Positions 16,040-63,166 of a stretch of DNA of 64,000 nt are shown here, in pieces (position 1 is the first letter of the stretch; each line of letters begins with the position of its first letter). The stretch lies in IMG/VR virus record IMGVR_UViG_3300027736_001324, positions 62,001 to 126,000 of that record. One strand, written 5' to 3'. The translations under genes and the position numbers were made by a program. The notes below the pieces were generated by a model. That model saw nothing but the letters and a program-made list of their open reading frames with translations. It was not told where the DNA came from and did no database searches.

Positions 16040-16979
16040 TATCGTAGATGTGGCAGACTTGGATTGTATCTATCTAAGTTATGATGAGCCACAGAAAGAA
16101 GAATTCTGGCTTAAGATAAAGAACATGGTTCCCTGGGCAAAGCGTGTTGATAGTGTTAAAGGTAGTGATGCCGCACATAAAGCCGCAGCAGAAGAATCTG
16201 ATACCGAAAGATTTATTCTTATTGATGGTGATAATATGCCTAATGAGAATTTCTTTAATATACAATTAGACTTTACTGATAAAGGTTCTGAATATCAGCT
16301 AGCACAATATCGTTGGAAAGCTGTTAATAGTATTAACGGACTACGTTATGGCAATGGCGGCATGAGTAGCTGGACTAAAACTTATGTGCGTGAAATGAAA
16401 ACTCACGAAAATCAAAAAGACGGAGATGTAGCACGTATTGCTGATTTCTGTATGGATGGAAAAGATAATTTATATTGGGCAATGCATGATTGTTATTCTA
16501 CTACTTATCCTAATTATACTCCGTTTCAAGCGTGGCGTGCTGGATTCCGAGAAGGAGTAAAAATGGTTCTTGATAAAGGTGCAAGACCTGATATTGACAC
16601 TTTTAAAGAAACTGTTGCTAGTCGCAACTTAAACAATTTAACAATCTGGCATAACGTAGGTGCTGATGTTGAGAATGGCATGTGGGCTATCTATGGTGCA
16701 AGACTTGGAACATATATGACTATGTTAACTGAGTGGGATCACGCAAATGTTCAATGGTTTGATAACTATATAACACTTTGGGAAGAACAAGAATACAGAG
16801 ATCCAGAACGTGAAGCAACATTGATTGGTGAAGCATTAAATGATAAACTAGGATTGCCAATGTGTACATTGAGTAGCGAACAAAGCAAATTCTTTAAGCG
16901 ACACTATAATGCTGATAAGTACAATATCGGTCCATTGATAAGAGAGATGGATGTAATAAGAAAGATTGAGGGTTGGTAA
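16029..16979 (+). CDS. GT2-like glycosyltransferase-family protein
   Basis: 'IYLSYDEP', 'GSDAAHKAAA', 'FILIDGDN' DxD, 'AWRAGFREGVKM'. Confidence 0.6.
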   Translation: MNSNIVDVADLDCIYLSYDEPQKEEFWLKIKNMVPWAKRVDSVKGSDAAHKAAAEESDTERFILIDGDNMPNENFFNIQLDFTDKGSEYQLAQYRWKAVNSINGLRYGNGGMSSWTKTYVREMKTHENQKDGDVARIADFCMDGKDNLYWAMHDCYSTTYPNYTPFQAWRAGFREGVKMVLDKGARPDIDTFKETVASRNLNNLTIWHNVGADVENGMWAIYGARLGTYMTMLTEWDHANVQWFDNYITLWEEQEYRDPEREATLIGEALNDKLGLPMCTLSSEQSKFFKRHYNADKYNIGPLIREMDVIRKIEGW

Positions 16980-30996: not shown

Positions 30997-31108
30997 AAAA
31001 ATTAAATACTTCATTGTAGAACGATTGTTTGGTAAAATTACCAGAGAATTGCGCTATAGAAAAAGATTAAAAGAATTACGCAAACGAGACCCGTTTATTT
31101 ACAAATGA
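30983..31108 (+). CDS. Small basic 41-aa protein ending RKRDPFIYK, not in the ORF track
   Basis: AAGGA RBS; ATGA-coupled to the carbamoyltransferase gene. Confidence 0.65.
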   Translation: MSILKKIKYFIVERLFGKITRELRYRKRLKELRKRDPFIYK

Positions 31109-32594: not shown

Positions 32595-35500
32595 ATGCTA
32601 AGAGATGTATTTTATTACGGCGCCAAACCCAACGTTCACCCAAGAGAAAAATTTGCAACTTCACTAGAAGATGCTAGACAACAATCTACCACAGAACATT
32701 TTTGGATAATAAACGAATATTGTGATTATCGTAATTTTGATTGGGACTTTGATTTTGAATTTCTACCCGACGAAGATGTATGGGCAGAAGAACATAACAA
32801 CGTATGGCCTAGTATACATCAAAAAGATAGCGGCACATGGCTATGCACATCAAACCCAACCGAGATAATTATATATCGGGCTGACGTTGAACCAGTAAAA
32901 CGTAAAAACGAAACACACAAAAATTGGGTACTACTAGATTTAGTAGATGAAACTAAATTTGATTTTAGTTGGCATCCAGACCCAACTGACCCTCCCTATA
33001 TCTATACATGGGGATGTAAATATTTCCCAGTAGAATTGCAAGCCTGCTTAGAATATCATGTTCCGGGTGCAACAACCGTGAAGTACATGGATAGTATTGT
33101 AGAGTTGTTGCCACATACAGATCGATGGGTTGAAGTACAGAATATTGACAAATCATTATTTGATATGTCATGGAGACCTAGTCCATTGGATCCTCCTATG
33201 AATTATGTTTGGGGTAACAAACACATTGATGGCAAATTGAAATCTACACTAGAGTATCATATGCCCGGTGCGACTGATACAAAGTATATGTCTTATCCTT
33301 TGCCAGTATTACCTGAGTGGGATAGATGGCAAATCCATGACGAGATAGATAAAACTAGTTTTGATTTTAGTTGGAGACCAGATCCAAGAGAGCCGGCTTA
33401 TATATACCAATGGGGTAATAAACATTATAGTAGTGAATTATCTCCTACTATTTCCTATACTGCCCCGGGAGCAACTGAAGTTAAACATATGTCACAAGAT
33501 GTTAATCTAGCAGTAAGTAAAAATTGGGTTTTCTATCACGCAGTAAATAAAACTAAATTTGATTTGACATGGAGACCTGATCCAACTAGCCCACCTTATA
33601 TCTATGCATGGGGAAATAAATATGATCCAGCAGAAGTTAAACCTACGCTAGAATATATTGTACCCGGGGCAACCGAATACAAGTATATGGACGTTGTTGA
33701 TTTAGAGCCAGAATGGGATAGATGGAAAGAACATATTTTTGTTGATCATTCTAAATTTGATTTTAGTTGGAGACCAGATCCTAATCTACATGAGCCACCT
33801 TATATCTATGTGTGGGGCAACAAGTATGATCCGGCAGAAGTTAAGCCTACGCTAGAATATCATGTGCCCGGAGCAACTGAATATAAGTATATGAACATTG
33901 TTGATTTAGAGCCAGAATGGGATAGATGGCAAGAAATTCAACCAGTAGATAAAAGTAAGTTTGATTTTAGTTGGAGACCTGATCCTAACTTACACGAACC
34001 ACCTTATATCTATGTGTGGGGTAATAAACATATATCAGCAGAACTTAAATCAACAATAGAATATCATGTGCCGGGCGCTACAGAACGCAAGTACATGAGT
34101 CAGTTAGTAGAAGTGTTGCCTGAATTCAATCGGTGGAAAGAAATACAATCTATTGATAGAAACAAGTTTGATTTAACATGGAGACCAGATCCAAGAGAAC
34201 CAGCATATATTTATGTATGGGGAAATAAACATATACCGGGTGAACTGAAATCAACAATAGAATATCAATGTGACGGGGCTACTGAATATAAGTATATGGA
34301 TGAACTTGTTGAAGTATTACCTGAACAAGAACACTGGAAAGTTACGCAAGAAGTAAAAAACTTTGACTTTACCTGGAGACCTGATCCACGTGAACCTGCA
34401 TACATTTACACTTGGGGTAATAAACATATAGCAGCAGAACTTAAACCCACAATAGAGTATTATTGTGAGGGTGCAACAGAACACAAGTATATGGGTGAAG
34501 TTGATGTTGTTCCTGAAATGGATCGTTGGAATATTGTACAAGAAATTTCTAACACATTTGATTTGTCATGGAGACCTGACCCACGTGAACCTGCATATAT
34601 CTATACATGGGGTAACAAATATATACCCGGAGATATAAAACCTACACTTGAATATCATTGTGAGGGTGCTACCGAACGAAAGTATATGGGTGATGTTGAT
34701 GTATTGCCTGAGTTAGACAAGTGGAAAGAAATTCAATCAATAGATAAAACTAAGTTTGATATGTCGTGGAGACCAGACCCGCGTGAACCGGCATACATTT
34801 ACGTGTGGGGTAATAAACACGTTGAAGCTGAATTAAAGTCAACTATTGAATATCATTGTCCTGATGCAACCGAACGCAAGTACATGGGTGATGTTGAAGT
34901 ATTACCTGAATTAGATAAATGGAATATTGTACAACAAGTAGAAAACTTTGATTTTACATGGAGACCAGATCCAAGAGAACCTGCATATATCTACACATGG
35001 GGTAACAAGCATGTTAGTGCTGAATTGAAACCGACACTTGAATATCATTGTCCTGATGCAACTGAACGAAAATACATGGGTGATGTTGAAGTGTTACCGG
35101 AGTTTGACAAATGGAAAGAAATACAGCCAATAGATAACACTAAGTTTGATATGTCGTGGAGACCTGATCCACGTGAACCTGCATATATTTACACATGGGG
35201 TAATAAACATGTTAGTGCTGAGTTTAAGCCAACACTTGAATATTATTGTGAAGGTGCAACAGAGCGCAAGTACATGGGTGATGTTGAAGTTTTACCTGAG
35301 TTTGACAAATGGAATATTGTACAACAAGTAGAAAACTTTGATTTTACATGGAGACCAGATCCAAGAGAACCTGCATATATTTATGTATGGGGTAACAAAT
35401 GGATACAAGGAGATTTAAAATCTACACTTGAGTATCACTGTGAAGGGGCAACTGAATTCAAGTATATGAAAGAATTATTAGATGTTGCACCAATACACGA

Positions 35501-38500
35501 CCACTGGAACATTATACAAAAAGTAGAAAACTTTGATTTTAGTTGGAGACCTGATCCACGTGAACCTGCATATATTTATATATGGGGTAATAAACATATA
35601 GCAGGTGAATTAAAACCAACACTTGAATTTCATTGCCAAGGTGCTATTGAACGTAAATTTATGGGTACTGCTGAAGTAGCACCAGAATGGGATAGATATC
35701 AAATATTAATACCAGTAGATAAAACTAGCTTTGACTTCACGTGGAGACCAGATCCCAGAGAACCTGAATTTATATATGTATGGGGTAATCAATCTAACAT
35801 TGCAGAAAAAGAACCTACTATTGAATATCATTGTCCTGGCGCTACTGAACGAAAATACATGAATGACAATGTGGCTAAGACATTACCTGTAGTTGAAAAT
35901 TGGAAGATATTAATTTCAGTAGAAAACTTTGATTTTAGTTGGAGACCTGATCCTAATAGCCCTCCCTACATCTATATATTTGGTAATCAATGGCATGATG
36001 CTATGACAGAGCCTACATTAGAATATCATGTAGAGGGCGCTGCCGAAAAGAAATATGTCACAGAGATTGTTCCTACTGCAACAAAGACTCAGGAGTATTG
36101 GAAAACTCTTATTCCAATCGAATCATTTGATTATAGCTGGAGACCCAATCCACATTCAACCCCTTACATATATGTATTTGGTAATCAATGGCATGATAGC
36201 ATAACTGAACCCACAATAGAATATCATTGTCCTGGCGCAACGGATAAGAAATACATTACTGATGTAATTGCATTAGCCAAATCAACAGCAACAGACAATC
36301 ATTGGAAACGATTAATACCGATTGAATCATTTGATTATAGCTGGAGACCTGATCCTAATAGTCCTCCTTATATCTATGTGTTTGGTAATAAATGGAACGA
36401 TGCTGCAACTGAACCATCGGTTGAATATTATGTTGACGGCGCAACTGAACACAAATATGTATCTGACCCTGTTGCTATTCCTAAAGCAGAGATACAATAC
36501 TGGGCTATCAATAATAATGATGACTTAGAAACATTTGATTTTACATGGAGACCCAATCCACATAGTCCATCACAAATATATCAATGGCAAGATAATGGAC
36601 CAAGGTATACGGTTCCTGGCGCAACAGATGTGGTGTTAATGGAACACACTGGAAAGACAAAGAAAGTAATCGTTAATCGTTACAAGATTAAAACAACATT
36701 GGAAGATTTAATTAACGAACATCCGGAAGAAGTATTCTGGGCTATCAACCCTGATTTGAATTATGATAAGTTTGACTTTAGTTGGCGACCCAACGAAGAA
36801 AACTTTAGACATATAAATGTATTTGGCAATGAGTATAGCAAAAATACACAAACGTATTATATTAATAGTCCAATGTATATGCTTGGAAACAAAGAATATA
36901 ATTATGTAGAGGATCAATCAGTGCAGGTTGATAGTAATCTAAGTATGTTCTTTATTGATAAAAGTAATAAGGAAAGTACAAGTAGATTTAATGAATTAAA
37001 ATTACGCTATCCACAATTACAAAAGACAAGATATCTTAATAGTTGGGTAGATACAATCAATCGTTGTATTACTAAATCAGAAACTAAATTGTTCTGGGTA
37101 CTGAATAGTGAATTAGATTATAGTGAGTTTGATTTTGACTTCTATCCTAGCCCATGGCAAATGAATATGATACATGTGTTTGGAACACAATGGAGTCATT
37201 GGGGTAACACCTACATGGTTAATAAAGAAACCTTTGCAGAAGATACAAAGTATGTAAAGATTATTGAACATCTATCTAACTTGAATTTTGTAAAACAAAG
37301 AAAAGCAAAAGCAACAAATGTATTGTATGACATTGTTTATATTGACCATGGTAATAAAGATTTGTCTGATATTAATAACTTAATCATCAAGTATGAAAAG
37401 AGTTATTTGACTACTTTTAGAAACATGTTAGATAAACTTTCAGTAAAGAAAGAACATTATGTTTGGGTAGCTAGTACTATATGTGATTACACAAACTTTG
37501 ACTTTACCTATATATGTGATCCGTTTGCCAAAGAGCAATTACATGTATTTCCAAGTGATAAGCAGAAGTTTGGTGATACGTTTTTAATTGATGTGAATAG
37601 ATTACGTGAATTAGTAGATGATATGACTACATTGGAAGACTACAATAAGATTAACTTTAATCAAAGTCAAAGAGTAAAAAGATTAGAAGCACCTGTGATT
37701 ATTACTGAGGAAGATACTCATGTATCTAGTATTAACACGGAGTTTGATTTTCCGTATGCTGTATTCACCACAGTTGATAATAAAGACATTAAAGTATTGG
37801 ATAATGAACCAATGAACATATGGAGTTATGAGACTAAAAATATCATAATAACCAGTGAAGGTGGAACAAGAATTATTGTTCCCAAAGAAGCAAGAAAATA
37901 TATTAAAAACGAATTATATGATTATCCATATATAATGCCCAATGACAAATTAGCAAAGTCTAATCCGTTGGACATTGTTTTCTTTAGTAACGGTGAAGCC
38001 TGTGCTGAGGCAAATTATAAACATTTGCTTAAACTAACTGAAAAGCTACCCAACAATGTATTAAGAATTGACGGTATAAATGGTCGTGTAAAAAGCCAAC
38101 ATGCTGCTGCTGAAAGTAGTGCTACCCCATGGTACTTCTTAGTCAATGCTAAACTGAAAGTAGATTCAAAGTTTAATTTTAATTGGCAACCGGACAGATT
38201 GCAGATACCTAAGCATTATATTTTCCATGCCACCAACCCTGTAAACGGATTAGTATATGGTCACCAAGCTATCGTTGCTAACAACAAGAAACTTACCTTA
38301 GCAAACTTTGGAACTGGATTAGACTTTACTATGGACAGTGAGCATGAAGTTGTTGCTATTAATAGCGGCATTGGTATGTATAATAGTAGTGAGTGGGATA
38401 CATGGCGTACTGCATTCCGCGAATGTATTAAACTTAAATTATCCAAAACTATGGAAAATAAAGAACGTCTAGATGTATGGTTAAACGTTGGCCTTGGTGA

Positions 38501-38639
38501 GTTTGCCCAATATAGTATACAAGGTGCCAAAGATGCAGTAGAATACTATTATGAAGTTGAAAGTGACTTTAAAAAATTGCGTTTAAGTTATGATTGGGAT
38601 TGGTTAAGAACATTCTATGAGACTAAATACAAACTATGA
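32595..38639 (+). CDS. 2014-aa protein with ~19 tandem ~65-aa W-R-P-D-P repeats and terminal GT-like domains
   Basis: Repeat unit FD(F/L/M)(S/T)WRPDPREPAYIY.WGNK....KPT(L/I)EYH..GATE.KYM; the C-terminal domain resembles ORF 16029-16979. Confidence 0.8.
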   Translation: MLRDVFYYGAKPNVHPREKFATSLEDARQQSTTEHFWIINEYCDYRNFDWDFDFEFLPDEDVWAEEHNNVWPSIHQKDSGTWLCTSNPTEIIIYRADVEPVKRKNETHKNWVLLDLVDETKFDFSWHPDPTDPPYIYTWGCKYFPVELQACLEYHVPGATTVKYMDSIVELLPHTDRWVEVQNIDKSLFDMSWRPSPLDPPMNYVWGNKHIDGKLKSTLEYHMPGATDTKYMSYPLPVLPEWDRWQIHDEIDKTSFDFSWRPDPREPAYIYQWGNKHYSSELSPTISYTAPGATEVKHMSQDVNLAVSKNWVFYHAVNKTKFDLTWRPDPTSPPYIYAWGNKYDPAEVKPTLEYIVPGATEYKYMDVVDLEPEWDRWKEHIFVDHSKFDFSWRPDPNLHEPPYIYVWGNKYDPAEVKPTLEYHVPGATEYKYMNIVDLEPEWDRWQEIQPVDKSKFDFSWRPDPNLHEPPYIYVWGNKHISAELKSTIEYHVPGATERKYMSQLVEVLPEFNRWKEIQSIDRNKFDLTWRPDPREPAYIYVWGNKHIPGELKSTIEYQCDGATEYKYMDELVEVLPEQEHWKVTQEVKNFDFTWRPDPREPAYIYTWGNKHIAAELKPTIEYYCEGATEHKYMGEVDVVPEMDRWNIVQEISNTFDLSWRPDPREPAYIYTWGNKYIPGDIKPTLEYHCEGATERKYMGDVDVLPELDKWKEIQSIDKTKFDMSWRPDPREPAYIYVWGNKHVEAELKSTIEYHCPDATERKYMGDVEVLPELDKWNIVQQVENFDFTWRPDPREPAYIYTWGNKHVSAELKPTLEYHCPDATERKYMGDVEVLPEFDKWKEIQPIDNTKFDMSWRPDPREPAYIYTWGNKHVSAEFKPTLEYYCEGATERKYMGDVEVLPEFDKWNIVQQVENFDFTWRPDPREPAYIYVWGNKWIQGDLKSTLEYHCEGATEFKYMKELLDVAPIHDHWNIIQKVENFDFSWRPDPREPAYIYIWGNKHIAGELKPTLEFHCQGAIERKFMGTAEVAPEWDRYQILIPVDKTSFDFTWRPDPREPEFIYVWGNQSNIAEKEPTIEYHCPGATERKYMNDNVAKTLPVVENWKILISVENFDFSWRPDPNSPPYIYIFGNQWHDAMTEPTLEYHVEGAAEKKYVTEIVPTATKTQEYWKTLIPIESFDYSWRPNPHSTPYIYVFGNQWHDSITEPTIEYHCPGATDKKYITDVIALAKSTATDNHWKRLIPIESFDYSWRPDPNSPPYIYVFGNKWNDAATEPSVEYYVDGATEHKYVSDPVAIPKAEIQYWAINNNDDLETFDFTWRPNPHSPSQIYQWQDNGPRYTVPGATDVVLMEHTGKTKKVIVNRYKIKTTLEDLINEHPEEVFWAINPDLNYDKFDFSWRPNEENFRHINVFGNEYSKNTQTYYINSPMYMLGNKEYNYVEDQSVQVDSNLSMFFIDKSNKESTSRFNELKLRYPQLQKTRYLNSWVDTINRCITKSETKLFWVLNSELDYSEFDFDFYPSPWQMNMIHVFGTQWSHWGNTYMVNKETFAEDTKYVKIIEHLSNLNFVKQRKAKATNVLYDIVYIDHGNKDLSDINNLIIKYEKSYLTTFRNMLDKLSVKKEHYVWVASTICDYTNFDFTYICDPFAKEQLHVFPSDKQKFGDTFLIDVNRLRELVDDMTTLEDYNKINFNQSQRVKRLEAPVIITEEDTHVSSINTEFDFPYAVFTTVDNKDIKVLDNEPMNIWSYETKNIIITSEGGTRIIVPKEARKYIKNELYDYPYIMPNDKLAKSNPLDIVFFSNGEACAEANYKHLLKLTEKLPNNVLRIDGINGRVKSQHAAAESSATPWYFLVNAKLKVDSKFNFNWQPDRLQIPKHYIFHATNPVNGLVYGHQAIVANNKKLTLANFGTGLDFTMDSEHEVVAINSGIGMYNSSEWDTWRTAFRECIKLKLSKTMENKERLDVWLNVGLGEFAQYSIQGAKDAVEYYYEVESDFKKLRLSYDWDWLRTFYETKYKL
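32960..36620 (+). repeat. Intragenic tandem repeat array, period ~190-205 bp
   Basis: 'tggagacc' anchors recur about every 195 bp; 34917-34990 and 35307-35380 are identical over 74 bp. Confidence 0.9.
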
Positions 38640-52908: not shown

Positions 52909-53162
52909 CACTAGAACCAGATACAATTGAATGCGTAGTACACACCATTAAGATGGGTGATGTAGAAGATCCTGATTTGTATGTTGCTGAACCAATTTGG
53001 AAATGGCAACAAACAGAAGAAGGACAATGGCTTATGAAAAATAGTAAGCCGGCTCCAATTTGGAAAAGATATCACGATCCAATGATATATGGTTATTCAT
53101 ACACCATCCATGCCTTTTTAAAATCAAAAGATTACGTATTTTGGAGTTTAAAGTATAAATGA
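52905..53162 (+). CDS. Hypothetical protein
   Basis: 'MGDVEDPDLY' motif; coupled to neighbours. Confidence 0.65.
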   Translation: MTLEPDTIECVVHTIKMGDVEDPDLYVAEPIWKWQQTEEGQWLMKNSKPAPIWKRYHDPMIYGYSYTIHAFLKSKDYVFWSLKYK

Positions 53163-54175
53163 ATATATTAATAACAGGTGGACTTGGACTTATTGGACAT
53201 AACGTAGTCACACGATTACAAGATTTGGGACATCAAGTATCAATTGTTGATAACAAAACTAATTATGGTATTATACCTCAAAGTGAAATTGATTATCTTA
53301 TAAGCGAACGAGAAAAGAAAGTTGTTAATGATAAATTTATTAACACCTTAAGTTTTATCTATAACAAAGATATTGCAGATGTTGGGGAAATGGATAATGT
53401 CCTTCATATTGAAGAACCCGAAATTGTTATTCACATGGCTAGCTTTCCTAGGCAGAAAGTAGTTAATAGTAATCCAGCATTGGGCAGTCGTACAATGAGT
53501 GAAGGGTTACTAAATTTATTAGAATTATCTAATAAGTACGAAGTCCGTAAATTTATATATCTTAGTAGTTCAATGGTATACGGAGACTTTACAGACGATG
53601 TAAAAGAAGATGCTATTTGTAAACCGCAAGGTCAGTATGGCATTATGAAATTAGCAGGTGAGTGGCTAGTGCGTGATTATTCTCGCAAAACCAATCTTGT
53701 ACATACTATTATTCGTCCAAGTGCAGTATACGGTCCATTAGATGTAGAAGATAGAGTTATCAGTAAATTCTTACTTACAGCAATGCGAGGTGACGCAATA
53801 AAAGTAAACGGTGAAAAAGAAACACTAGACTTTACTTATGTTGATGACGCTGCTGATGGAATTGTTGCGGCTACACTAAGCGATAACACCGAGAACAAAA
53901 CATACAATATTACAAAGAGCCATAGCGTTACATTATTAGAAGCTGCACAGATGGCACTAAAATTAGCAGGTGGTGGTACACTATCTGTGTATCCCAAGGA
54001 CAGTGATTTCCCATCACGGGGAGCATTGAACATTGATGCTGCACGTAGAGACTTTGGGTATGATCCTAAAGTTGATGTAGCTGAAGGATTTCAGAAATAT
54101 TATGAGTGGTTAATTAATGATCCATACTTCAATAAAGATAAATATATGAATGTGGATTCTATCATATCTTCCTGA
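53159..54175 (+). CDS. NAD-dependent nucleotide-sugar epimerase/dehydratase
   Basis: 'ITGGLGLIG', 'SSSMVYG', YxxxK 'YGIMK', 'DFTYVDD'. Confidence 0.9.
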   Translation: MNILITGGLGLIGHNVVTRLQDLGHQVSIVDNKTNYGIIPQSEIDYLISEREKKVVNDKFINTLSFIYNKDIADVGEMDNVLHIEEPEIVIHMASFPRQKVVNSNPALGSRTMSEGLLNLLELSNKYEVRKFIYLSSSMVYGDFTDDVKEDAICKPQGQYGIMKLAGEWLVRDYSRKTNLVHTIIRPSAVYGPLDVEDRVISKFLLTAMRGDAIKVNGEKETLDFTYVDDAADGIVAATLSDNTENKTYNITKSHSVTLLEAAQMALKLAGGGTLSVYPKDSDFPSRGALNIDAARRDFGYDPKVDVAEGFQKYYEWLINDPYFNKDKYMNVDSIISS

Positions 54176-56264: not shown

Positions 56265-56316
56265 TCAGAACATCAAATCCTAGAATAAGTAATTATATCA
56301 AATTATAGGATTCTTG

Positions 56317-57018
56317 ATGCTAATCGATATTAACAAAACACTAGATTTAATTAAACTTAAATTTTACAACGAATGGTTATACACCGCTCATATCTATGAA
56401 GAAGGTGATAGCGAACTACACAAGGGGTTAACCGAAACTGTAGTTAAACAATACATTGACCCACTTGAAATTCCCAAAGATGCTAAAATCTTAGATTTAG
56501 GCTGCGGCCCGGGCTATTTCTTAGACGAGATGAAATCTAGAGGTTATACTGATTTAACTGGGGTAACATTAAGCCCAGGTGATATAAAAATCTGTGAAGA
56601 TAAAGGGCATACAATTAAAAAGTATGATTTAACTTTCATCCCGCAAAGTGAAGGTTACTATGATGAATCAGTAGATATGATATTCTTGCGTCATGCATTA
56701 GAACATAGTCCATATCCTATCTTTAGTTTAATGGAATATAATCGTATATTAAAGCAGGGTGGCAAGATTTACATTGAAGTCCCGCAACCTGATTGTGAAA
56801 GACGCCATGAAGATAACTTAAATCATTACAGTATTTTGGGGCAAACTCAACTAGCAGCATTGATTGTTAGAACTGGATTTAACATTGATAAATTCGATAA
56901 TTTTGAATTTGATGTTGAATTCCCTGATCAGGAGAACCCAGGGGAACCTAATCTTAAAGCAAAAGAGAAATTCTATTGCATCGTTGCTACTAAGCAACGA
57001 CCTTTAGATATCAAGTAA
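56317..57018 (+). CDS. Class I SAM-dependent methyltransferase
   Basis: 'ILDLGCGPG', 'RHALEHS', 'RILKQGG'. Confidence 0.85.
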   Translation: MLIDINKTLDLIKLKFYNEWLYTAHIYEEGDSELHKGLTETVVKQYIDPLEIPKDAKILDLGCGPGYFLDEMKSRGYTDLTGVTLSPGDIKICEDKGHTIKKYDLTFIPQSEGYYDESVDMIFLRHALEHSPYPIFSLMEYNRILKQGGKIYIEVPQPDCERRHEDNLNHYSILGQTQLAALIVRTGFNIDKFDNFEFDVEFPDQENPGEPNLKAKEKFYCIVATKQRPLDIK

Positions 57019-57053
57019 AACAATAAATACTCACTACATGTGAGTATTTTTTT

Positions 57054-57332
57054 ATGTTCGATCCATTTAAACAAGCAAAAATTCAAAACGGTTATGCCAA
57101 ACTCAGAGGCATTAAACTCCCTGAGAAGGATATGACATTAGATGAACTAAAACAATTGAGTGGGTCTGGACAAGTCACTGGTGAATATTCATATACACTA
57201 TTACATGAATTAGCGCAAAAGAAACAACAATATATGCGTGAGAATAATATCAAGCCAGGTGACAAAGAATGGTTTAGAGTTATGTTTGCTAAAACACATC
57301 TTACAGGTGAAGATCCGTTTTCTAAAAACTAG
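57054..57332 (+). CDS. Hypothetical late protein
   Basis: 'ELKQLSG' and 'MRENNIKPG..EWF' motifs; directly upstream of terminase. Confidence 0.6.
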   Translation: MFDPFKQAKIQNGYAKLRGIKLPEKDMTLDELKQLSGSGQVTGEYSYTLLHELAQKKQQYMRENNIKPGDKEWFRVMFAKTHLTGEDPFSKN

Positions 57333-57355: not shown

Positions 57356-58912
57356 ATGGCAACCAATAATGCAGGACCTTCGTTAGTAAAGAATCCCTAT
57401 ACAAAGACGAAATTTAAGAATGATAAGGAATTACAGGACTTTATAAAGTGCTGTGACCCAGACACAGGTTATCTATACTTCATGGATAACTTCTTTATGA
57501 TACAACACCCTACCATGGGCAGCTTAGTATATCATCCATACGGATATCAAAAACGATTAATAGAAACTTATCATAACTATCGCTATAGTATTAGCTTGAT
57601 GCCACGACAGTCAGGTAAATCAACAAGCGCAGCCGGATACTTACTCTGGTATGCCATGTTCAAACCAGACAGTACGATTCTTATCGCAGCACATAAGTAC
57701 ACGGGCGCACAAGAGATCATGCAGCGTGTTCGTTACGCATATGAAAACTGTCCAGACTATATCAAAGCAGGTGTAACAACATATAACAAAGGCTCATTGG
57801 ACTTTGAGAATGGTAGTCGTATTGTAAGTGCAACTACAACTGAAAACACAGGTCGTGGTATGAGTATTACACTACTATACCTTGACGAGTTTGCGTTCGT
57901 TAGACCAAGTATCGCTAAAGAATTCTGGACAGCTATTACTCCAACATTAAGTACTGGTGGTAAAGCTATTATCACAAGTACACCAAACAGTGACGAAGAT
58001 CAGTTTGCCTTCATCTGGAAAGGTGCTAACAAAACTGAAGATGAATTTGGTAACACAACTGAATTAGGTATCAATGGCTTTAGAGCATATAGAGCAGAGT
58101 GGCATGAACAACCAGGTAGAGATCAGAAGTGGGCTGATGAAATGAAAGCACAGCTTGGTGAGGATCGTTTCAACCGAGAGATTGGTTGCGAATTCATTAT
58201 CGCTGATGAAACACTTATTAATCCTAATACATTATTAATGTTAGAAGGAATAGAACCAGTTAGTCGTATGGGACAAGTTCGTTGGTATCAGAAGCCAAAA
58301 AAGGGCAGTATCTATACAGTATCATTAGATCCAAGTCTTGGTACAGGTAGTGATCCAGCGGCAATACAAATCTTTGAAGCAAATACTGTTACACAGATTG
58401 GTGAGTGGAAACACAACAAAACTGATATCCCAACACAGATTAAACTTATTGCACAAATAAACAAATACATAGTTGAATGTACAGGTGAACCAAACAATTT
58501 ATATTATTCTGTAGAGAATAACAGTATCGGTGAGGCCTCATTAGTGTCATTAAACGAATATGGAGAGAACAATATCCCCGGAACATTCATTAGCGAACCG
58601 GGCAAGAAGCGTAAGGGCTTTAATACTACAAACAAGAGTAAATTAACCGCTTGCGCCAAGTTTAAGACATTACTAGAAAGCAAGAAACTAACCATTAATA
58701 GTCGTAGTCTTATCAGCGAGTTGAAAGCGTTTGTAGCACATGCGGGTAGTTATGCTGCCAAGATCGGTGATACAGATGATTTAATTATGGCCAGCTTATT
58801 AAATGTCAGAATGATTCAAGAATTAGGGTCATATCACTTTGAATTAGATAGTTATGTCAAGGACCACGAGGAATTTATTGCACCCTTGCCCTTCTTTGCC
58901 GTGCTAAGTTGA
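57356..58912 (+). CDS. Terminase large subunit (T4 gp17-like)
   Basis: Walker A 'PRQSGKS', 'GRG.S', Walker B 'LLYLDEFAF', 'ITSTPN', nuclease 'SLDP...DDLIMA'. Confidence 0.95.
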   Translation: MATNNAGPSLVKNPYTKTKFKNDKELQDFIKCCDPDTGYLYFMDNFFMIQHPTMGSLVYHPYGYQKRLIETYHNYRYSISLMPRQSGKSTSAAGYLLWYAMFKPDSTILIAAHKYTGAQEIMQRVRYAYENCPDYIKAGVTTYNKGSLDFENGSRIVSATTTENTGRGMSITLLYLDEFAFVRPSIAKEFWTAITPTLSTGGKAIITSTPNSDEDQFAFIWKGANKTEDEFGNTTELGINGFRAYRAEWHEQPGRDQKWADEMKAQLGEDRFNREIGCEFIIADETLINPNTLLMLEGIEPVSRMGQVRWYQKPKKGSIYTVSLDPSLGTGSDPAAIQIFEANTVTQIGEWKHNKTDIPTQIKLIAQINKYIVECTGEPNNLYYSVENNSIGEASLVSLNEYGENNIPGTFISEPGKKRKGFNTTNKSKLTACAKFKTLLESKKLTINSRSLISELKAFVAHAGSYAAKIGDTDDLIMASLLNVRMIQELGSYHFELDSYVKDHEEFIAPLPFFAVLS

Positions 58913-58930
58913 GTTTAAGATAAATACATT

Positions 58931-61900
58931 ATGCCTACGAATACAGAATCACTAAACCGCGAATTGTTTAGATTATTGTCTAAATATAAACCAAAACCCC
59001 TGGATGCTGAGGGCAAAGCCACTCCTGTTCCAGAAGAAGCAGATATTTTCAAGTTTGAATTCACTAAAGACGGAGAAGATTACGGAACTGTTTATGTTAC
59101 ATTAGATGATGAACGTGTACTGACTGTCTATTTTGGCGATGACGTATCCGATAGTCCCGGCGACAAAACACCTGGATTAGATTATGATGACACATGGAGT
59201 GGGTTACTACATCAATTAAGTTCTTGGAGAATGACCAAGGGCCTAAGAGGATTCAAAACACAAAACAAAGACCGAGTCGGAGATGACATGGCAAGAAGGA
59301 ACCATATGAGAAACAAAGATAAAATAGCAGAGGGTTACTACCCAATGGGCAAGAGTCGCAGTTATAGTGATGCTGTACCTAGCGTAAAGATTGTTATTGA
59401 ACATAGCCGTGTCATTGAAGAAGGTGAACAACGCTATCGTAATATCAATAGAATTTTCTTAGAGAATCAAGACGGTGAACGCTATTTACTTGATACTAAG
59501 AAGCCTGGTATTGCCCGTGTCTATGCTAGACATATTGCTGAAGGTGGCAAAGTCAATGATGACCGTTGGAGTCATATTGGTAATCTTTGTGAAGAATATC
59601 AAAAGATGGCTGGATTTGTCCGTGCTACACGTAATGGACAATTCAATGAATCAGCACAAGCATTAGTTAACGAAGGACTAGAACACTATCAAAGTCTACG
59701 TGAATCATTAAGCCGTATGACTGGTAAGCGTGGATATAACGCTTATTTTGAAAGTTGGACTCCACCTTTGATGGAAGATGGAACTGAAGAAAACAATCTA
59801 AACGAATTGTTTGTACAAGAGACATTAGATCCACGCATTGAAAGCGTAATGCCAATATTGAATAGAATACATAAAAAAGTTTCTGAATCAATAGTTGATA
59901 AAGAAATGAACAAGTTAGCAGAGTGGGCTGATAGTTTAGTTGAAGAAGAAAGTCTAACAAGTAATAATCCAGGTGGCATTCCTGAAGATCGCAGTTTAAA
60001 GACAGAGGCCAAGTACGATCCAACCGTCGATGGTTCACACAGCTACGGCACAGATTTGCTATTCAATATTCGTATGCTATACATATATGCTAGAGACGGT
60101 AGGGACACCCGTCATCAGATTGCATCGTTGAAGAATTTAAAAGATGGAATTGAACAAAGTGAAGAACCGCGTCTTATCCAGTGCTACGACTACCTAATGA
60201 AGAATCTTGCTGGTGGAACAGTGACTGATCCTAAAATGATAATGCAAATAGCAGATAAGGCTCATCAATTATTTCACCCAAGCCTTGAACCCATTGCACA
60301 AGCAACTCGTGAGGGTGTAGAAATGGAAGAAGCTATTACTCCAGGTGCTTCTTTACAAAGATTTAGAAACGATCCTAGAGGTAATGAAAAATTACCTGCA
60401 AAAGAAGTTGACGAAGGCAGTTCAGAAAACAAATATTCTAACTTATCTAACCGCGGAGTAACTCGTGGAATAAATCGTGCCGCTGATGATTTTGACAGAT
60501 TTATGGACCTTGACCAAGTAGAATCACCACATTATAAAACACAACATCAACAAGATACAAAGCAAAGACTAAAAACAAAACCAATGGCAGGTCCTAAGGG
60601 GCAATTACCTGAAGAGCAAGGTGTGGCGGAAGAAGGTCTTGATGCTAATCAAAAGCGTGTAGGTCAATTAGGCCCAACAGAGAAAGTTAAAAACAATAAC
60701 ATTGGTAAACTAGTCGGTGCTAATGAAAACTTTATCAACCAAGCTAGCCAAGCAGTTACAACTGAAGAAGATGAGGGTATGTTTGGTAGATCCAAAAACG
60801 ATAAACGTTATTTAGATAAATTTGATCCAACTGAAGTGATGAACATCAGTGATGATCCTAGTAAGGCACATAAAACAACGGGCAAGGGTTCATTAAGAAC
60901 ATCTAAGGAAGATTTAGAATTTGCATTTGGACCACCCGGAGAAGATGATACATGGGTTTTAGAATTTGGTAATGGATTAATTGCTACTATATATCCTCAA
61001 TCTAACAGTGGTGGCATGGATTGGATCATAGGTGGTAATCATCCAGACACTGAAGATTTTGTGCATATGGCTTATTCGGCTGCGCTTGATGATGAACTTG
61101 AAGAAGGTGAACATACTCAACATGCCATGCGCGGCCGCAATCCTGGTGCTAACGAATTTGAACATGATTTTGAAAATGATAAGATTGATAACATCCATGA
61201 CAAGATATCAAAGATGTTAAAGAGATTAGAGAAACCAAAACATGAACCAAGTATGAAAGATACCGATCTTGGCAATACATTACATGAAGTAGACACTGGT
61301 GAATATGATGCCCGTAAATCAACTCATAAGGGTGAAACTACTCCAGAACAGGAAAAGGAATTCCGTAAGAAAGTAGACACATACGGCAAAGAATTAGAAC
61401 AGAGACAAAAAGAAAAGGGTAATGTAAAAGAAGGGCAAGAAGATTTTGATGCTATTCTAAGAATCATTAGCAAGAAAAATGTGAAAGAAAGCATCCAATT
61501 AAATGAAAGTCTCATGGATTCATTGAACAGTATGATTGCTAAAATTAAAGCAATGCCAGGAATACAAAAATATATTCAAATGGCACAATCCAAGAAAGCA
61601 GAATTGACTCAAGCATTACAACATAGTGCAAATGGTAAAGATTTAGTTGCAAACATTCAACAAGCAGTTGGCGGACAACAAGCTGTAGCTGAAGGTTGGG
61701 GTCAAAAAATCGGCGGCGCTGTGGCTGCTAGTGCAGGCGGCGGTCTATTAGCAGGTGCTGCCGACATTATGATGAGAGCATATATTGCTATGGGTAAACC
61801 AGATTTAACACAGATGATGAATGACCCTAATGGTAAAAATGCTTTGGTACTAGTATCAATGTTAGTTGTATTGGGTGCATTAGCAATGTTTGCCGGCGGC

Positions 61901-61996
61901 CATCAAGTTAAACAAGGTATGGACAATGATATCGGACAACAAATGCGTGAAGGTCAAGAGGACCTAGACGCTATTCTAAGAATCATTAGAAAATAA
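58931..61996 (+). CDS. Modular acidic head-associated protein (putative prohead-core / internal polyprotein)
   Basis: Follows terminase, late motif upstream, many (V/L/I)xE-(G/S/E) junctions, duplicated C-terminal 'EGQED.DAILRII'. Confidence 0.5.
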   Translation: MPTNTESLNRELFRLLSKYKPKPLDAEGKATPVPEEADIFKFEFTKDGEDYGTVYVTLDDERVLTVYFGDDVSDSPGDKTPGLDYDDTWSGLLHQLSSWRMTKGLRGFKTQNKDRVGDDMARRNHMRNKDKIAEGYYPMGKSRSYSDAVPSVKIVIEHSRVIEEGEQRYRNINRIFLENQDGERYLLDTKKPGIARVYARHIAEGGKVNDDRWSHIGNLCEEYQKMAGFVRATRNGQFNESAQALVNEGLEHYQSLRESLSRMTGKRGYNAYFESWTPPLMEDGTEENNLNELFVQETLDPRIESVMPILNRIHKKVSESIVDKEMNKLAEWADSLVEEESLTSNNPGGIPEDRSLKTEAKYDPTVDGSHSYGTDLLFNIRMLYIYARDGRDTRHQIASLKNLKDGIEQSEEPRLIQCYDYLMKNLAGGTVTDPKMIMQIADKAHQLFHPSLEPIAQATREGVEMEEAITPGASLQRFRNDPRGNEKLPAKEVDEGSSENKYSNLSNRGVTRGINRAADDFDRFMDLDQVESPHYKTQHQQDTKQRLKTKPMAGPKGQLPEEQGVAEEGLDANQKRVGQLGPTEKVKNNNIGKLVGANENFINQASQAVTTEEDEGMFGRSKNDKRYLDKFDPTEVMNISDDPSKAHKTTGKGSLRTSKEDLEFAFGPPGEDDTWVLEFGNGLIATIYPQSNSGGMDWIIGGNHPDTEDFVHMAYSAALDDELEEGEHTQHAMRGRNPGANEFEHDFENDKIDNIHDKISKMLKRLEKPKHEPSMKDTDLGNTLHEVDTGEYDARKSTHKGETTPEQEKEFRKKVDTYGKELEQRQKEKGNVKEGQEDFDAILRIISKKNVKESIQLNESLMDSLNSMIAKIKAMPGIQKYIQMAQSKKAELTQALQHSANGKDLVANIQQAVGGQQAVAEGWGQKIGGAVAASAGGGLLAGAADIMMRAYIAMGKPDLTQMMNDPNGKNALVLVSMLVVLGALAMFAGGHQVKQGMDNDIGQQMREGQEDLDAILRIIRK

Positions 61997-62006
61997 AAAG
62001 GGTAAA

Positions 62007-62033
62007 TAAACCTCACTTAAAAGGTGAGGTTTA
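62007..62033 (+). terminator. Hairpin after the modular protein gene
   Basis: taaacctcac-N7-gtgaggttta. Confidence 0.55.
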
Positions 62034-62045
62034 CCACATCTGGCA

Positions 62046-62082
62046 TAAATACATTGACAGGTTGAGAAAGTAGTGCTATACT
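62046..62082 (+). promoter_or_regulatory. Tandem late motif (TAAATA 62046-62051) and sigma70 promoter for the SSB gene
   Basis: TTGACA (62054)-17-TATACT (62077). Confidence 0.75.
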
Positions 62083-62161: not shown

Positions 62162-63166
62162 ATGGCATCATTAGCAGAAATCCGCGCACGTATCGCAGCG
62201 CAAGACAATAAGTCAACAACAAAGAGTTCTAACACTCAATCAGATAATTCTATCTACCCCCACTGGAATATGGACGAAGGCACAACAGCCGCAATTCGTT
62301 TCTTGCCCGATGGCGACACAAAGAACGAATTCTTCTGGGTAGAAAAACAAATCATTAAACTTCCATTCAATGGAGTTAAAGGACATCCTGAAATGAAACA
62401 GGTTGTTGTTCAAGTACCTTGCGTTGAAATGTATAACGATGGTTCAACTTGTCCTATTTTGGCTGAGGTTCGCCCTTGGTACAAAGATGAGACATTGAAA
62501 GAAATGGCAAACAAATATTGGAAGAAGCGTAGTTACATCTTTCAAGGCTTTGTACGTCAGAACCCACTTGGTGATGACAAGACTCCTGCGAATCCAATTC
62601 GTAGATTCGTTATCAGCCCACAAATTATCCCAATCGTTAAGAGTGGATTACTTGATCCTGAAATCATGGAATTGCCTACAGATTATACACGTGGTCTTGA
62701 CTTCAATATTAAGAAGTCTAGCAAAGGTGGCTATGCTGATTACAGTACAAGTAACTGGGCACGTAGAGAAACAGCATTGACTGAGGTTGAACAAACAGCA
62801 ATCGAGGCACATGGATTGTTTGACCTTAGTACATTTTTACCGAAGAAGCCAGGTGAAGCTGAATTGCGTATTTTGAAAGAAATGTTTGAAGCATCAGTAG
62901 ATGGTCAACCATACGACAACGAACGTTGGGGACAATACTATCGTCCATGGGGCTTAGATGCTCCAGCTGGTTCACAAACTGAAGCAGCGCCCTTGCCAAC
63001 TCGCACTGCACCAGCAGCACCCGCAGGTCTACCCGCTTGGGAAGATGATGTTGCGGCAGCAGAAGCATCTTTCACTAGTCCAGTTGTAGTTCCTACAGCG
63101 GCTCCGTCAAGTGATAAAGCACAAGACATTCTAGCAATGATTCGTGCTAGACAAAACAAGTCTTAA
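62162..63166 (+). CDS. Single-stranded DNA-binding protein (T4 gp32-like)
   Basis: 'LAEIRA', 'IRFLP', 'PC.E...CPI', 'G.DF...K..KGGYADYSTS', acidic tail, next to uvsX. Confidence 0.88.
   Translation: MASLAEIRARIAAQDNKSTTKSSNTQSDNSIYPHWNMDEGTTAAIRFLPDGDTKNEFFWVEKQIIKLPFNGVKGHPEMKQVVVQVPCVEMYNDGSTCPILAEVRPWYKDETLKEMANKYWKKRSYIFQGFVRQNPLGDDKTPANPIRRFVISPQIIPIVKSGLLDPEIMELPTDYTRGLDFNIKKSSKGGYADYSTSNWARRETALTEVEQTAIEAHGLFDLSTFLPKKPGEAELRILKEMFEASVDGQPYDNERWGQYYRPWGLDAPAGSQTEAAPLPTRTAPAAPAGLPAWEDDVAAAEASFTSPVVVPTAAPSSDKAQDILAMIRARQNKS

What the first reader, a model, noticed from the sequence alone, without database searches (positions are those of the whole stretch)
58931..61996. Modular head protein with cassettes bounded by protease-like Glu sites and a duplicated C-terminus
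Seen: after a ~340-aa N-terminal region, the protein is a string of unrelated segments joined at motifs such as LVEE, LKTE, VDEG, GVAEE, LEEG, VKEG, LNES, VAEG and MREG. 'EGQED.DAILRII' occurs twice (61430-61470 and 61949-61989, with 20 identical nt), bracketing a ~160-aa cassette with a glycine zipper and a hydrophobic helix. Established: T4 prohead protease gp21 cleaves after (L/I)-x-E. Inference: a polyprotein that packages exchangeable cargo peptides into the head for release by maturation cleavage.
Basis: partly seen in the sequence, partly recalled or inferred. Interest (0 to 1): 0.6.

Follow-up and report, generated by a model that had tools for sequence, protein, structure and literature searches.

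The report
Shuffled-cassette head protein, giant phage
A 1021-residue protein of an uncultured freshwater giant T4-like phage has a fixed front domain, a fixed 14-residue tail helix and, between them, cassettes that differ from strain to strain and are joined at motifs that look like cutting sites of the phage's own head-maturation protease, so it is probably a precursor cut into pieces inside the head, though no experiment has shown this.

Summary
ORF 58931-61996 is real. The 13-residue peptide occurs twice, with 20 identical nt, around a 173-residue unit that carries a glycine zipper and a hydrophobic helix.

Comparison with more than 1,400 relatives (clusters at 50% identity) supports modularity. 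Residues 1-352 and the last ~14 residues are conserved. The middle is a mosaic of gained, lost and reordered cassettes. A close relative ends exactly at the internal copy, so that copy is a former C-terminus.

Cassette junctions fall after hydrophobic-x-Glu (Φ-x-E). This holds at DNA breakpoints and in 76 of 86 distinct junction contexts.

The genome encodes a T4-type S77 prohead protease. Φ-x-E-[G/S] enrichment ranks this protein second of 210 ORFs (z 7.1), between the scaffold (9.1) and the protease (5.2). In T4 the same statistic picks only gp22 and gp21.

The last cassette also exists as a free-standing ~165-residue gene in other phages.

Not shown: presence in virions, cleavage, or any cassette function. 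The front domain has no known fold. The virion mass-spectrometry label on a distant Pseudomonas phage PA5oct homologue is weak evidence.

Verdict: probably a protease-processed modular head protein, a new variant of known kinds (T4 internal proteins, polyvalent proteins).

The parts
58931..61996 (+). Whole gene, 1021 aa (P0001). It starts 18 nt after the large terminase gene (57356-58912).
58931..59986 (+). Conserved N-terminal domain, aa 1-352. Sub-domain A is aa 1-112 (alpha/beta). Sub-domain B is about aa 125-340 (beta-sheet plus long helices). It ends at I-P-E352. Eleven hydrophobic-x-Glu sites between aa 132 and 320 are kept in at least 92 of 104 homologues.
   Evidence: phrog_13484 'virion structural protein', E 1e-8. 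No solved fold matched.
59987..60628 (+). Variable block 1, aa 353-566. It holds a confidently predicted four-helix bundle (aa 372-457, pLDDT about 92) followed by a disordered stretch, and ends at V-A-E566. It is replaced by other sequence in relative L005, and by only 6 nt in a contig of run X7.
60629..60730 (+). Conserved central module, aa 567-600 ('EGLDANQKRVGQLGPTEKV...GKLVGANE'). It is present in most homologues and is predicted unstructured. In distant homologues it lies directly before the C-terminal helix.
60731..61105 (+). Variable block 2, aa 601-725: a linker, then a small beta-sheet-plus-helix domain (aa 672-719). It ends at L-E-E725.
61106..61288 (+). Cassette 'EHTQHAM...', aa 726-786, mostly disordered. 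It ends at L-H-E786.
61289..61432 (+). Cassette 'VDTGEYDARK...', aa 787-834, with a helix at aa 805-828. It ends at V-K-E834. In relative L006 it lies upstream of the central module, so the module order is reshuffled.
61433..61480 (+). Internal copy of the tail peptide, aa 835-850 (GQEDFDAILRIISK...). It is a former C-terminus: relative P0002 (759 aa) stops exactly here.
61481..61951 (+). Terminal cassette, aa 851-1007: helical, with a glycine-zipper segment (aa 925-953) and a hydrophobic helix (aa 971-990). It ends at M-R-E1007. It is an insertion relative to L005. Free-standing homologues of about 165 aa exist in other phage contigs.
61952..61993 (+). C-terminal amphipathic helix peptide, aa 1008-1021 (GQEDLDAILRIIRK). 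It is conserved in kind at the very end of at least 179 of 211 distinct homologue tails. In 118 of these, a [LIVM]xE[GS] site has its Glu exactly 4 residues upstream of the helix core.
61430..61495 (+). Direct repeat, copy 1 (66 nt).
61949..62014 (+). Direct repeat, copy 2 (76% identical to copy 1, 20 nt identical core). L005 nt 6233-6282 matches both copies.
62005..62035 (.). 12-bp hairpin directly after the stop codon. The best sigma-70-like promoter of the region follows at 62054-62082, ahead of the SSB gene. The gene therefore closes the transcription unit that holds the terminase gene.

Best explanation
The gene encodes a hypervariable, modular precursor protein of the phage head.

Shown:
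- Three elements are fixed across a very large family of uncultured giant T4-like phages: a 352-residue N-terminal domain, a 34-residue central peptide, and a 14-residue C-terminal amphipathic helix.
- Between them lie cassettes that are gained, lost, swapped and reordered between closely related strains.
- The junctions fall after hydrophobic-x-Glu (Φ-x-E), usually followed by Gly, Ser or Glu.
- This motif is the recognition pattern of T4-type prohead proteases, and the genome encodes such a protease.

Inferred:
- The precursor is built into the prohead core. The conserved N-domain and/or the C-terminal helix act as the docking signal.
- The S77 protease then cuts at the junctions. It probably also cuts at the 11 conserved sites inside N-terminal sub-domain B.
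- This releases folded cassettes (a four-helix bundle, a small beta domain, a two-helix membrane-type module) as separate small head proteins. The disordered linkers and the tail peptide are trimmed away.

More speculative:
- The released cassettes are ejected with the DNA and act early in infection. Their turnover would then reflect an arms race, as with the T-even internal proteins.

Origin of the duplicated tail: a complete cassette-plus-tail unit was added behind a former C-terminus.
For: Mosaicism:
- More than 1,500 homologues of 596-1076 aa have an N-domain 85-98% identical, yet the best local alignment covers only about 34% of the query.
- There are 1,407 clusters at 50% identity, 378-1601 aa long.
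- Pairs with 90-100% identical N-domains share on average only 52% of the variable region.
- DNA comparison with three close relatives gives flanks of 88-98% identity. The gene-internal breaks lie at aa 352, 561/566, 615, 725, 786, 834 and 1007. Module order is reshuffled in L006. The 519-bp last cassette is bounded by the repeat.
- Contigs from other lake samples show cassette indels at the same junctions.

Motif at junctions:
- The Glu of [LIVM]xE sits exactly at homology breakpoints: 69 of 900 de-duplicated right-end contexts against a baseline of about 22, and 79 of 691 left starts. Control motifs are flat.
- Three recurrent modules keep Φ-x-E directly upstream in 76 of 86 distinct upstream contexts.
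- A [LIVM]xE[GS] site has its Glu at a fixed 4-residue spacing before the tail helix in 118 tails.

Protease link:
- S77 protease, gp23-type capsid protein and gp20-type portal genes are in the genome.
- The capsid protein's N-terminus carries LLEG, LLEG and LLAE|SSAG.
- The genome-wide enrichment z-score ranks the scaffold 9.1, this protein 7.1 and the protease 5.2, out of 210 ORFs.
- The same statistic on 74 kb of T4 ranks gp22 at 5.6 and gp21 at 5.0, with nothing else above 2.5.
- T4 Alt loses propeptides at both ends, at ITE-6 and LTE-619 (PMC5694885).

Context:
- The gene follows the terminase gene by 18 nt. A hairpin and a promoter separate it from the SSB gene. This synteny holds in all relatives checked.

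Cassette autonomy:
- The terminal cassette has free-standing homologues of about 165 aa, in which 'QLDEG' (once 'QIDEG') lies where P0001 has 'QLNES'.
- The fold model shows beads on a string. 7 of 10 variable-region sites lie in low-confidence linkers.
Against: - There is no direct evidence of virion location or cleavage.
- The PA5oct homologue (23% identity over aa 10-315) is labelled as a virion protein from mass spectrometry. So are PA5oct's SSB orthologue (50% identical to the downstream gene here) and its UvsX-like protein, so the label is not specific.
- No other ORF in this genome, which is only 69% complete, carries the tail peptide. It is therefore not a shared targeting signal of the T4 CTS kind.
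- The N-domain's conserved Φ-x-E sites could be structural or catalytic residues rather than cut sites.
- The complex prediction of the protease with the tail gave no verdict.
- Some junctions end in E without a hydrophobic residue at P3 (EDE-615, ANE-599).
- The major breakpoints coincide with the edges of conserved modules. Homologous recombination would place them there whatever the motif does.
Confidence: 0.5

Rival explanations
1. Scaffold-like assembly factor, not a cargo carrier. The protein is built into the prohead core and cut by the protease, but the variable region is disposable filler. It would be degraded and expelled like gp22, and the cassette turnover would be largely neutral.
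For: - 312 of 669 variable-region residues have pLDDT below 50.
- Motif density resembles that of the scaffold.
- N-terminal sub-domain B has conserved sites every 10-40 residues, like a protein meant to be chopped up.
- Long, multiply cut propeptides are known in SPN3US and phiKZ head proteins (PMC10052503).
Against: - Several cassettes are confidently folded (aa 372-457 at pLDDT about 92; aa 859-997).
- One cassette is conserved as an independent gene at 51-66% identity. This argues for a function of its own.
- The genome already has a gp22-like scaffold.
Confidence: 0.2
2. An uncleaved protein. The Glu motifs would then be linker or helix-capping features, or leftovers of recombination at module edges. 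The comparison here, recalled from memory, is with the conserved glycine-rich or His-box motifs that delimit the exchangeable segments of T-even tail-fibre adhesins. On this reading the protein works intact as a long flexible tether or decoration.
For: - The major breakpoints lie at the edges of the three conserved modules, where homologous recombination would put them anyway.
- Short shared DNA words occur at junctions, such as the exact 16-nt repeat at 59415 and 61098 and the 'GAAGAAGG' words.
Against: - The motif is kept at the protein level with a varying P3 (V/L/I/M) and a free P2, so DNA microhomology is at most about 5 nt.
- Control motifs show no breakpoint enrichment.
- Motif enrichment to this degree occurs otherwise only in the scaffold and the protease, both here and in T4.
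Confidence: 0.15
3. A hub protein of packaging, replication or recombination that is not part of the virion. Its C-terminal helix would dock onto a partner of the replication or recombination genes next door, perhaps the same partner as the SSB's own C-terminal helix.
For: - The conserved gene order is terminase, this gene, gp32-like SSB, UvsX.
- The SSB ends in a conserved amphipathic helix ('AQDILAMIRARQ') of similar character.
- The PA5oct mass-spectrometry label is not specific for structural proteins.
Against: - The SSB tail is invariant while the polyprotein tail comes in at least three types, so there is no co-variation.
- A hairpin and a strong promoter separate the gene from the SSB gene, while it abuts the terminase gene.
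- The protease-motif enrichment is unexplained on this reading.
- The SSB and UvsX genes are not among the 15 most motif-enriched ORFs.
Confidence: 0.08
4. A self-processing polyvalent protein. The conserved N-domain would itself be a peptidase that releases the cassettes, as proposed for the zincin-like domains of polyvalent proteins.
For: - Invariant His, Glu and Arg residues sit on a beta-sheet plus two helices (H158, E164, H201, E204, H215, E221).
- Weak shape matches to clusters carrying MPTase-PolyVal (TM 0.28-0.30).
- A structural neighbour in BFVD is annotated as carrying a large-polyvalent-protein-associated domain.
Against: - There is no HExxH or other peptidase motif.
- There is no Pfam hit, even at E below 1 across 104 members.
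- There is no solved peptidase among the fold matches (best Z 6.3, a KA1-like match to aa 2-106).
- TM 0.3 is below any meaningful threshold.
Confidence: 0.05

Closest known systems
T4 internal proteins IPI/IPII/IPIII and Alt (capsid-targeted, cut by gp21, ejected with the DNA)
   Same: - The phage has a T4-type head module and an S77 protease.
- The cleavage-type motif is hydrophobic-x-Glu.
- The variable parts are highly diverse and are attached to a conserved short peptide.
- Alt loses propeptides at both ends (PMC3012670, PMC5694885).
   Different: - In T4 each internal protein is a separate gene with a roughly 10-residue N-terminal targeting sequence.
- Here many cassettes are strung in one 600-1600-residue polypeptide.
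- That polypeptide has a 352-residue conserved N-domain and a conserved C-terminal helix.
- There is no sequence similarity to the IPs or Alt, and no shared signal on other proteins of this genome.
Polyvalent proteins of phages and conjugative elements (Iyer et al. 2017, PMC5512222)
   Same: - Large multi-domain proteins with very variable architectures.
- Encoded next to portal or terminase genes.
- Proposed to be packaged, processed into units and delivered with the DNA.
- A BFVD structural neighbour of the N-domain is annotated as carrying a large-polyvalent-protein-associated domain.
   Different: - None of the hallmark enzymatic domains (MPTase, ArdC-N, ParB, methylases, MuF) is detectable in this protein.
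- Processing would be done by the head protease in trans, not by a built-in peptidase.
- The cassettes are small (50-210 aa) and half of the region is disordered.
phiKZ / 201phi2-1 / SPN3US head and ejection proteins with long, multiply cut propeptides
   Same: - Giant phages.
- A protease related to gp21 that cuts after Glu within a short motif.
- Multiple cuts within one precursor (PMC10052503, PMC5694885).
   Different: - Their motif is A/S/G-x-E and their protease is family S80.
- Their propeptides are N-terminal and the mature part is a single body.
- No strain-to-strain cassette shuffling has been reported for them.
PA5oct gp278 / PHROG 13484 'virion structural protein'
   Same: - The N-domain is homologous (tblastn 5e-10 with 23% identity over aa 10-315; phrog E 1e-8).
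- The position is the same, downstream of the large terminase gene and upstream of the SSB and UvsX genes.
   Different: - The PA5oct protein is 496 aa and lacks the central module.
- Its C-terminus has no significant sequence similarity to this tail; it is only helix-like to the eye.
- It has no described modularity or function.

Membership tests
Substrates of T4-type (S77, gp21-like) prohead protease | The phage encodes an S77 prohead protease | tested here: met
   PF03420 match at E 3.3e-29, G000:C1:25714-26157. phrog_207 'head maturation protease', E 4e-62.
Substrates of T4-type (S77, gp21-like) prohead protease | Hydrophobic-x-Glu sites present beyond chance and conserved | tested here: met
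   z 7.1, rank 2 of 210 ORFs. The T4 control picks gp22 and gp21. Sites are conserved at junctions and before the tail helix.
Substrates of T4-type (S77, gp21-like) prohead protease | The protein is present in proheads or virions | not testable with these tools
   There is only a mass-spectrometry label on the distant PA5oct homologue. PA5oct's SSB orthologue and its UvsX-like protein carry the same label.
Substrates of T4-type (S77, gp21-like) prohead protease | Cleavage observed at the sites | not testable with these tools
   No proteomic data are at hand. The complex prediction gave no verdict.
T4 internal-protein family (CTS-bearing) | A short N-terminal capsid-targeting sequence shared by several head-internal proteins and ending in a cleavage site | tested here: not met
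   The N-terminus is part of a 352-aa conserved domain. No other ORF in the genome shares the N- or C-terminal peptide.
Polyvalent proteins (Iyer et al. 2017) | Many domains in one polypeptide, with highly variable architectures among relatives | tested here: met
   Mosaic, reordered cassettes.
Polyvalent proteins (Iyer et al. 2017) | Hallmark conflict domains (zincin-like MPTase, ArdC-N, DdrB-ParB, methylases, LPD domains) | tested here: not met
   No Pfam family in P0001. DUF6321 appears as a cassette only in homologues P0013 and P0037.
Polyvalent proteins (Iyer et al. 2017) | Encoded among virion or packaging genes of a portal-terminase phage | tested here: met
   The gene lies directly after the large terminase gene.
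PHROG 13484 / PA5oct gp278-like proteins | Sequence homology of the N-terminal domain | tested here: met
   phrog_13484 at E 1e-8 over aa 117-272. tblastn at 5e-10 over aa 10-315. BLASTP at 4e-16.
Tape-measure proteins | Length constant among close relatives, because it sets the tail length | tested here: not met
   Lengths of 596-1076 aa occur among homologues whose N-domains are mostly 85-98% identical.

The most novel reading that the evidence does not exclude
This would be a previously undescribed way of loading a phage head. A single 'cargo array' precursor is docked by a conserved N-domain and/or a C-terminal helix. The head protease frees its interchangeable cassettes at standard hydrophobic-x-Glu joints. 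Lineages could then swap, add or drop ejected effector proteins by recombination without having to re-evolve targeting. One such effector would be a small two-helix membrane protein that also exists as a free gene. The system is widespread, with at least 1,400 clusters at 50% identity among uncultured giant T4-like phages.
Probability: 0.3. Interest if true: 0.8.

Novelty: new variant of a known kind. Interest (0 to 1): 0.62.

Why it matters
If the cassettes are released in the head and ejected, this family is a natural plug-in system for delivering proteins into bacteria together with phage DNA. It would be a compact record of an arms race in abundant, uncultured freshwater giant phages. It also offers defined parts (docking domain, tail helix, joint motif) that could be tested for packaging foreign proteins, as was done with the T4 capsid-targeting sequence. 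Even if the variable part is only filler, the family shows that head-protease motifs can be read from a genome by a simple enrichment statistic. That statistic picks the known substrates in T4 and flags further candidate head proteins here.

Tried and rejected
- Pfam on the protein and on 10 homologues found nothing but DUF6321 in two homologues. Pfam at E below 1 on 104 N-domains found no consistent family.
- A profile search of the N-domain against PDB sequences gave no hit.
- Foldseek against the PDB gave no match at E below 0.01. The VIA wide search gave a best Z of 6.3 (KA1-like, aa 2-106) plus generic helical hairpins. The Atlas gave TM of at most 0.40. I do not claim a known fold for the N-domain, and I do not claim that the fold is new.
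- The VIA search on the variable-region model found only a generic four-helix bundle (Z at most 8.2).
- Complex prediction of the S77 protease with residues 990-1021 returned no verdict (score 0.01, controls not run). It counts neither for nor against binding.
- A search of all six frames of the genome for further copies of the tail peptide, or for N-terminal leaders of that kind, found none. There are no paralogues of any cassette in the genome.
- The idea that the N-terminal leader of the free-standing cassette homologues is homologous to the tail peptide was rejected. The two are colinear in the alignment, but the score is not above shuffles (p 0.2-0.7).
- Co-variation of the SSB's C-terminal helix with the tail type was not found.
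- The T4 late-promoter word TATAAATA is not enriched: 2 occurrences against 12.9 expected.
- A tape-measure reading was rejected because of the length variation.
- Cassette 353-495 has almost no free-standing relatives. The language-model look-alike search for aa 616-725 gave only a 0.79 hit to an unnamed viral cluster.
Full report
**What is there.**
- Window 58931-61996 (+) is an uninterrupted ORF of 1021 codons.
- The window is part of a 263.7-kb IMG/VR virus record, estimated 69% complete. That record also encodes a gp23-type major capsid protein, a gp20-type portal and a T4-type S77 prohead protease. The organism is therefore an uncultured giant T4-like phage.
- Near-identical DNA is found only in freshwater metagenomes, in 18 studies.
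- The gene starts 18 nt after the large terminase gene. It is followed by a 12-bp hairpin, then a near-consensus sigma-70-like promoter, then a gp32-like SSB gene and uvsX.
- This gene order is kept in every relative inspected. It is also kept in Pseudomonas phage PA5oct, where one extra gene lies between the terminase gene and the homologue.

**Checking the observation.**
- The duplicated peptide is confirmed: 61430-61495 and 61949-62014 are 76% identical over 66 nt with 20 identical nt, 519 nt apart.
- [LIVM]xE[GSAE] is over-represented in residues 346-1021 (10 observed, 3.5 expected, p about 0.0015) and in residues 1-345 (11 observed, 2.1 expected).
- Three corrections apply. The conserved front ends at IPE-352. 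VAEG-919 is internal to a cassette. A third conserved element, residues 567-600, was missed.

**Orthologues are not colinear.**
- The word-based search found more than 1,500 homologues of 596-1076 aa. Their first ~350 residues are mostly 85-98% identical to the query, yet the best local alignment covers only about a third of it.
- The exhaustive search with residues 1-345 found 1,407 clusters at 50% identity, 378-1601 aa long. In many of them extra sequence is also inserted between residues ~115 and ~125.
- Nearly all end in the same kind of C-terminal amphipathic helix, in variants such as ...DLDAILRIIRK...DELARILTIMNHRR and ...DPLDxIKRLLGK. At least 179 of 211 distinct tails match a helix pattern.
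- Pairs whose N-domains are 90-100% identical share on average only 52% of their variable region.
- At the DNA level, the flanks and the N-domain of three close relatives are 88-98% identical to the window. The interior breaks into blocks that are absent, replaced or reordered.
- Relative P0002 stops exactly at the internal copy of the tail. One 50-nt stretch of its contig matches both repeat copies. The last 519 bp are therefore an added cassette-plus-tail unit, and the internal copy is a former C-terminus.
- Contigs from four other lake samples show joints at 59986>60323, at 59988>60628 (with 6 nt between) and at 61272>61430. These are cassette indels at the same points. They come from assembled contigs at 88% likeness or more, so they show related strains, not variation within one strain.

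**The joints carry a protease-type motif.**
- DNA breakpoints map to IPE-352, LPE-561/VAE-566, ANE-599, EDE-615, LEE-725, LHE-786, VKE-834 and MRE-1007. All follow Glu, and six of the eight have an aliphatic residue at P3.
- In an all-against-all comparison of 262 homologues, the Glu of [LIVM]xE sits exactly on homology right-ends in 21% of cases, against a 2.4% background.
- After de-duplicating contexts and excluding the two dominant boundaries, the count is 69 of 900 at offset 0 against a baseline of about 22. For left starts it is 79 of 691. Four control motifs are flat.
- Three recurrent modules ('VDTGEYD', 'LDANQKR', 'EHTQHAM') are directly preceded by hydrophobic-x-Glu (Φ-x-E) in 76 of 86 distinct upstream contexts. 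P3 and P2 vary while Glu is fixed.
- In 124 of the 179 tails with a helix, [LIVM]xE[GS] precedes the helix. In 118 of them the Glu is exactly four residues before the helix core.

**Link to the head protease.**
- The phage's capsid protein begins with LLEG, LLEG and LLAE|SSAG. By my own comparison from memory, the last lies where T4 gp23 is cut. The gp22-like scaffold has 25 Φ-x-E sites in 366 residues.
- I scored every ORF of 100 aa or more (210 in all) for [LIVM]xE[GS] against composition-preserving shuffles. The scaffold is first (z 9.1), this protein second (13 observed, 2.7 expected, z 7.1) and the protease itself third (z 5.2).
- As a positive control, the same statistic on 74 kb of T4 (86 ORFs) ranks gp22 first (5.6) and gp21 second (5.0), with nothing else above 2.5.
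- T4-type and phiKZ-type prohead proteases cut after Glu in short motifs. T4 Alt is trimmed at both ends, at ITE-6 and LTE-619 (PMC5694885; PMC10052503).
- The T-even internal proteins are a diverse set joined only by a conserved targeting sequence (PMC3012670).

**Anatomy of the parts.**
- *N-domain.* The model (104-sequence alignment, mean pLDDT 83.8) has an alpha/beta sub-domain (aa 1-112), then a beta-sheet with long helices (aa 125-340).
- No solved structure matches it convincingly. Its structural neighbours are uncharacterised phage proteins, one of them annotated as carrying a large-polyvalent-protein-associated domain.
- Eleven Φ-x-E sites between residues 132 and 320 are kept in at least 92 of 104 homologues, with P3 swapping among I, L and V and Glu almost always kept. 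This suits a region meant to be chopped up, but it could equally reflect structure or catalysis.
- *Variable region.* The model has a mean pLDDT of 58.7, from a patchy alignment. It shows beads on a string:
  - a four-helix bundle (aa 372-457, pLDDT about 92);
  - a small beta-plus-helix unit (aa 672-719);
  - helices at aa 805-828 and 835-849;
  - a helical terminal cassette (aa 859-997);
  - the tail helix (aa 1002-1020).
- Residues 462-666 and 717-800 are predicted disordered. Seven of the ten variable-region sites lie in these low-confidence stretches.
- *Terminal cassette.* It has 22 free-standing homologues of about 156-250 aa (51-66% identity) in phage contigs. In those that begin at their own start codon, a ~25-residue N-terminal helix precedes 'QLDEG' (once 'QIDEG'), at the point where P0001 has 'QLNES'.

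**How it most likely works.**
- Shown: the modular, recombining architecture; the three conserved anchors; the motif at the joints; a matching protease in the genome; the motif statistics.
- Inferred: the precursor enters the prohead core, the S77 protease cuts at the joints, the folded cassettes remain as small head proteins, and the linkers and tail are removed.
- Speculative: the cassettes are ejected and act in the host.
- I put the processed-head-precursor reading at about 0.5. The rivals are a scaffold-like factor with disposable filler (0.2), an uncleaved protein whose motifs are linker or recombination features (0.15), a non-virion hub protein (0.08) and a self-processing peptidase (0.05).

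**Weak points.**
- The only virion evidence is the PA5oct mass-spectrometry label. PA5oct's SSB orthologue (50% identical to the gene downstream here) and its UvsX-like protein carry the same label.
- The tail peptide is not shared by any other ORF of this incomplete genome.
- The complex prediction gave no verdict.

**Comparison and novelty.**
- It works like the T4 internal proteins and Alt, and like the 'polyvalent proteins' of Iyer et al. (PMC5512222).
- It is not a member of either by their defining features. It has no N-terminal shared targeting sequence, no hallmark conflict domains and no built-in peptidase.
- I found no paper describing this family or architecture.
- I rate it a new variant of a known kind.

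Noticed in passing
window 63100-63166 (end of the SSB gene 62162-63166); also L005, L006, L016, L017, L001: The gp32-like SSB ends in a conserved amphipathic helix ('...SSDKAQDILAMIRARQ...'). It is nearly invariant from this phage to PA5oct. Its character resembles that of the polyprotein's tail helix, which raises the question of whether the two bind a common partner. It does not co-vary with the polyprotein's tail types.
   Followed up: partly
L001 (PA5oct 125964-138866): PA5oct gp277, annotated 'structural protein (ESI-MS/MS)', is a 50%-identical orthologue of the SSB. The UvsX-like gp274 carries the same mass-spectrometry note. 'Virion protein' labels in this record therefore include abundant DNA-binding proteins and should be read with care.
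   Followed up: yes
G000:C1:204618-207293 (+), 203054-204616 (+), 229968-232448 (-), 168401-171262 (+); all outside the window: Four more large ORFs (520-953 aa) are enriched in [LIVM]xE[GS] (z 4.3-5.1). One has a LysM domain. One has a weak ParB-like match plus a C-terminal DUF6321, the same domain that forms the last cassette of homologues P0013 and P0037. They are candidate additional protease-processed head proteins that share cassettes with this family.
   Followed up: partly
window 59415-59430 and 61098-61113: An exact 16-nt repeat (TTGAAGAAGGTGAACA) encodes ...EEGE(Q/H) at two hydrophobic-x-Glu-Gly sites, one inside the N-domain (IEEG-165) and one at a cassette joint (LEEG-726). It may be microhomology or chance.
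   Followed up: no
window 1-10800 and 32595-38639: Two very large ORFs. One has at least 3,599 codons and runs off the window's 5' end; its start matches phrog_10938 'virion structural protein'. The other has 2,014 codons and no PHROG match.
   Followed up: partly
window 16973-18550, 31105-32586, 53159-54175, 56314-57018: A scatter of modification-type genes sits among structural genes: a weak match to a radical-SAM family, a Nol-like carbamoyltransferase, an NAD-dependent sugar epimerase/dehydratase and a class I methyltransferase. This hints at glycan or nucleotide-sugar chemistry encoded by the phage.
   Followed up: no
L009 6001-6504 and relatives (P0265-P0286): The free-standing homologues of the terminal cassette lie in non-structural regions of other phage contigs, beside an HNH-motif protein, a GIY-YIG-like protein and an HTH gene. 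They keep 'QLDEG' (once 'QIDEG') after a ~25-residue N-terminal helix. Whether they are themselves head-targeted and cleaved is open.
   Followed up: partly
window 57025-57049 and 57054-57332: A 10-bp hairpin follows the methyltransferase gene. A 92-codon ORF with no family match then lies directly upstream of the large terminase gene. By position it could be the small terminase subunit.
   Followed up: no
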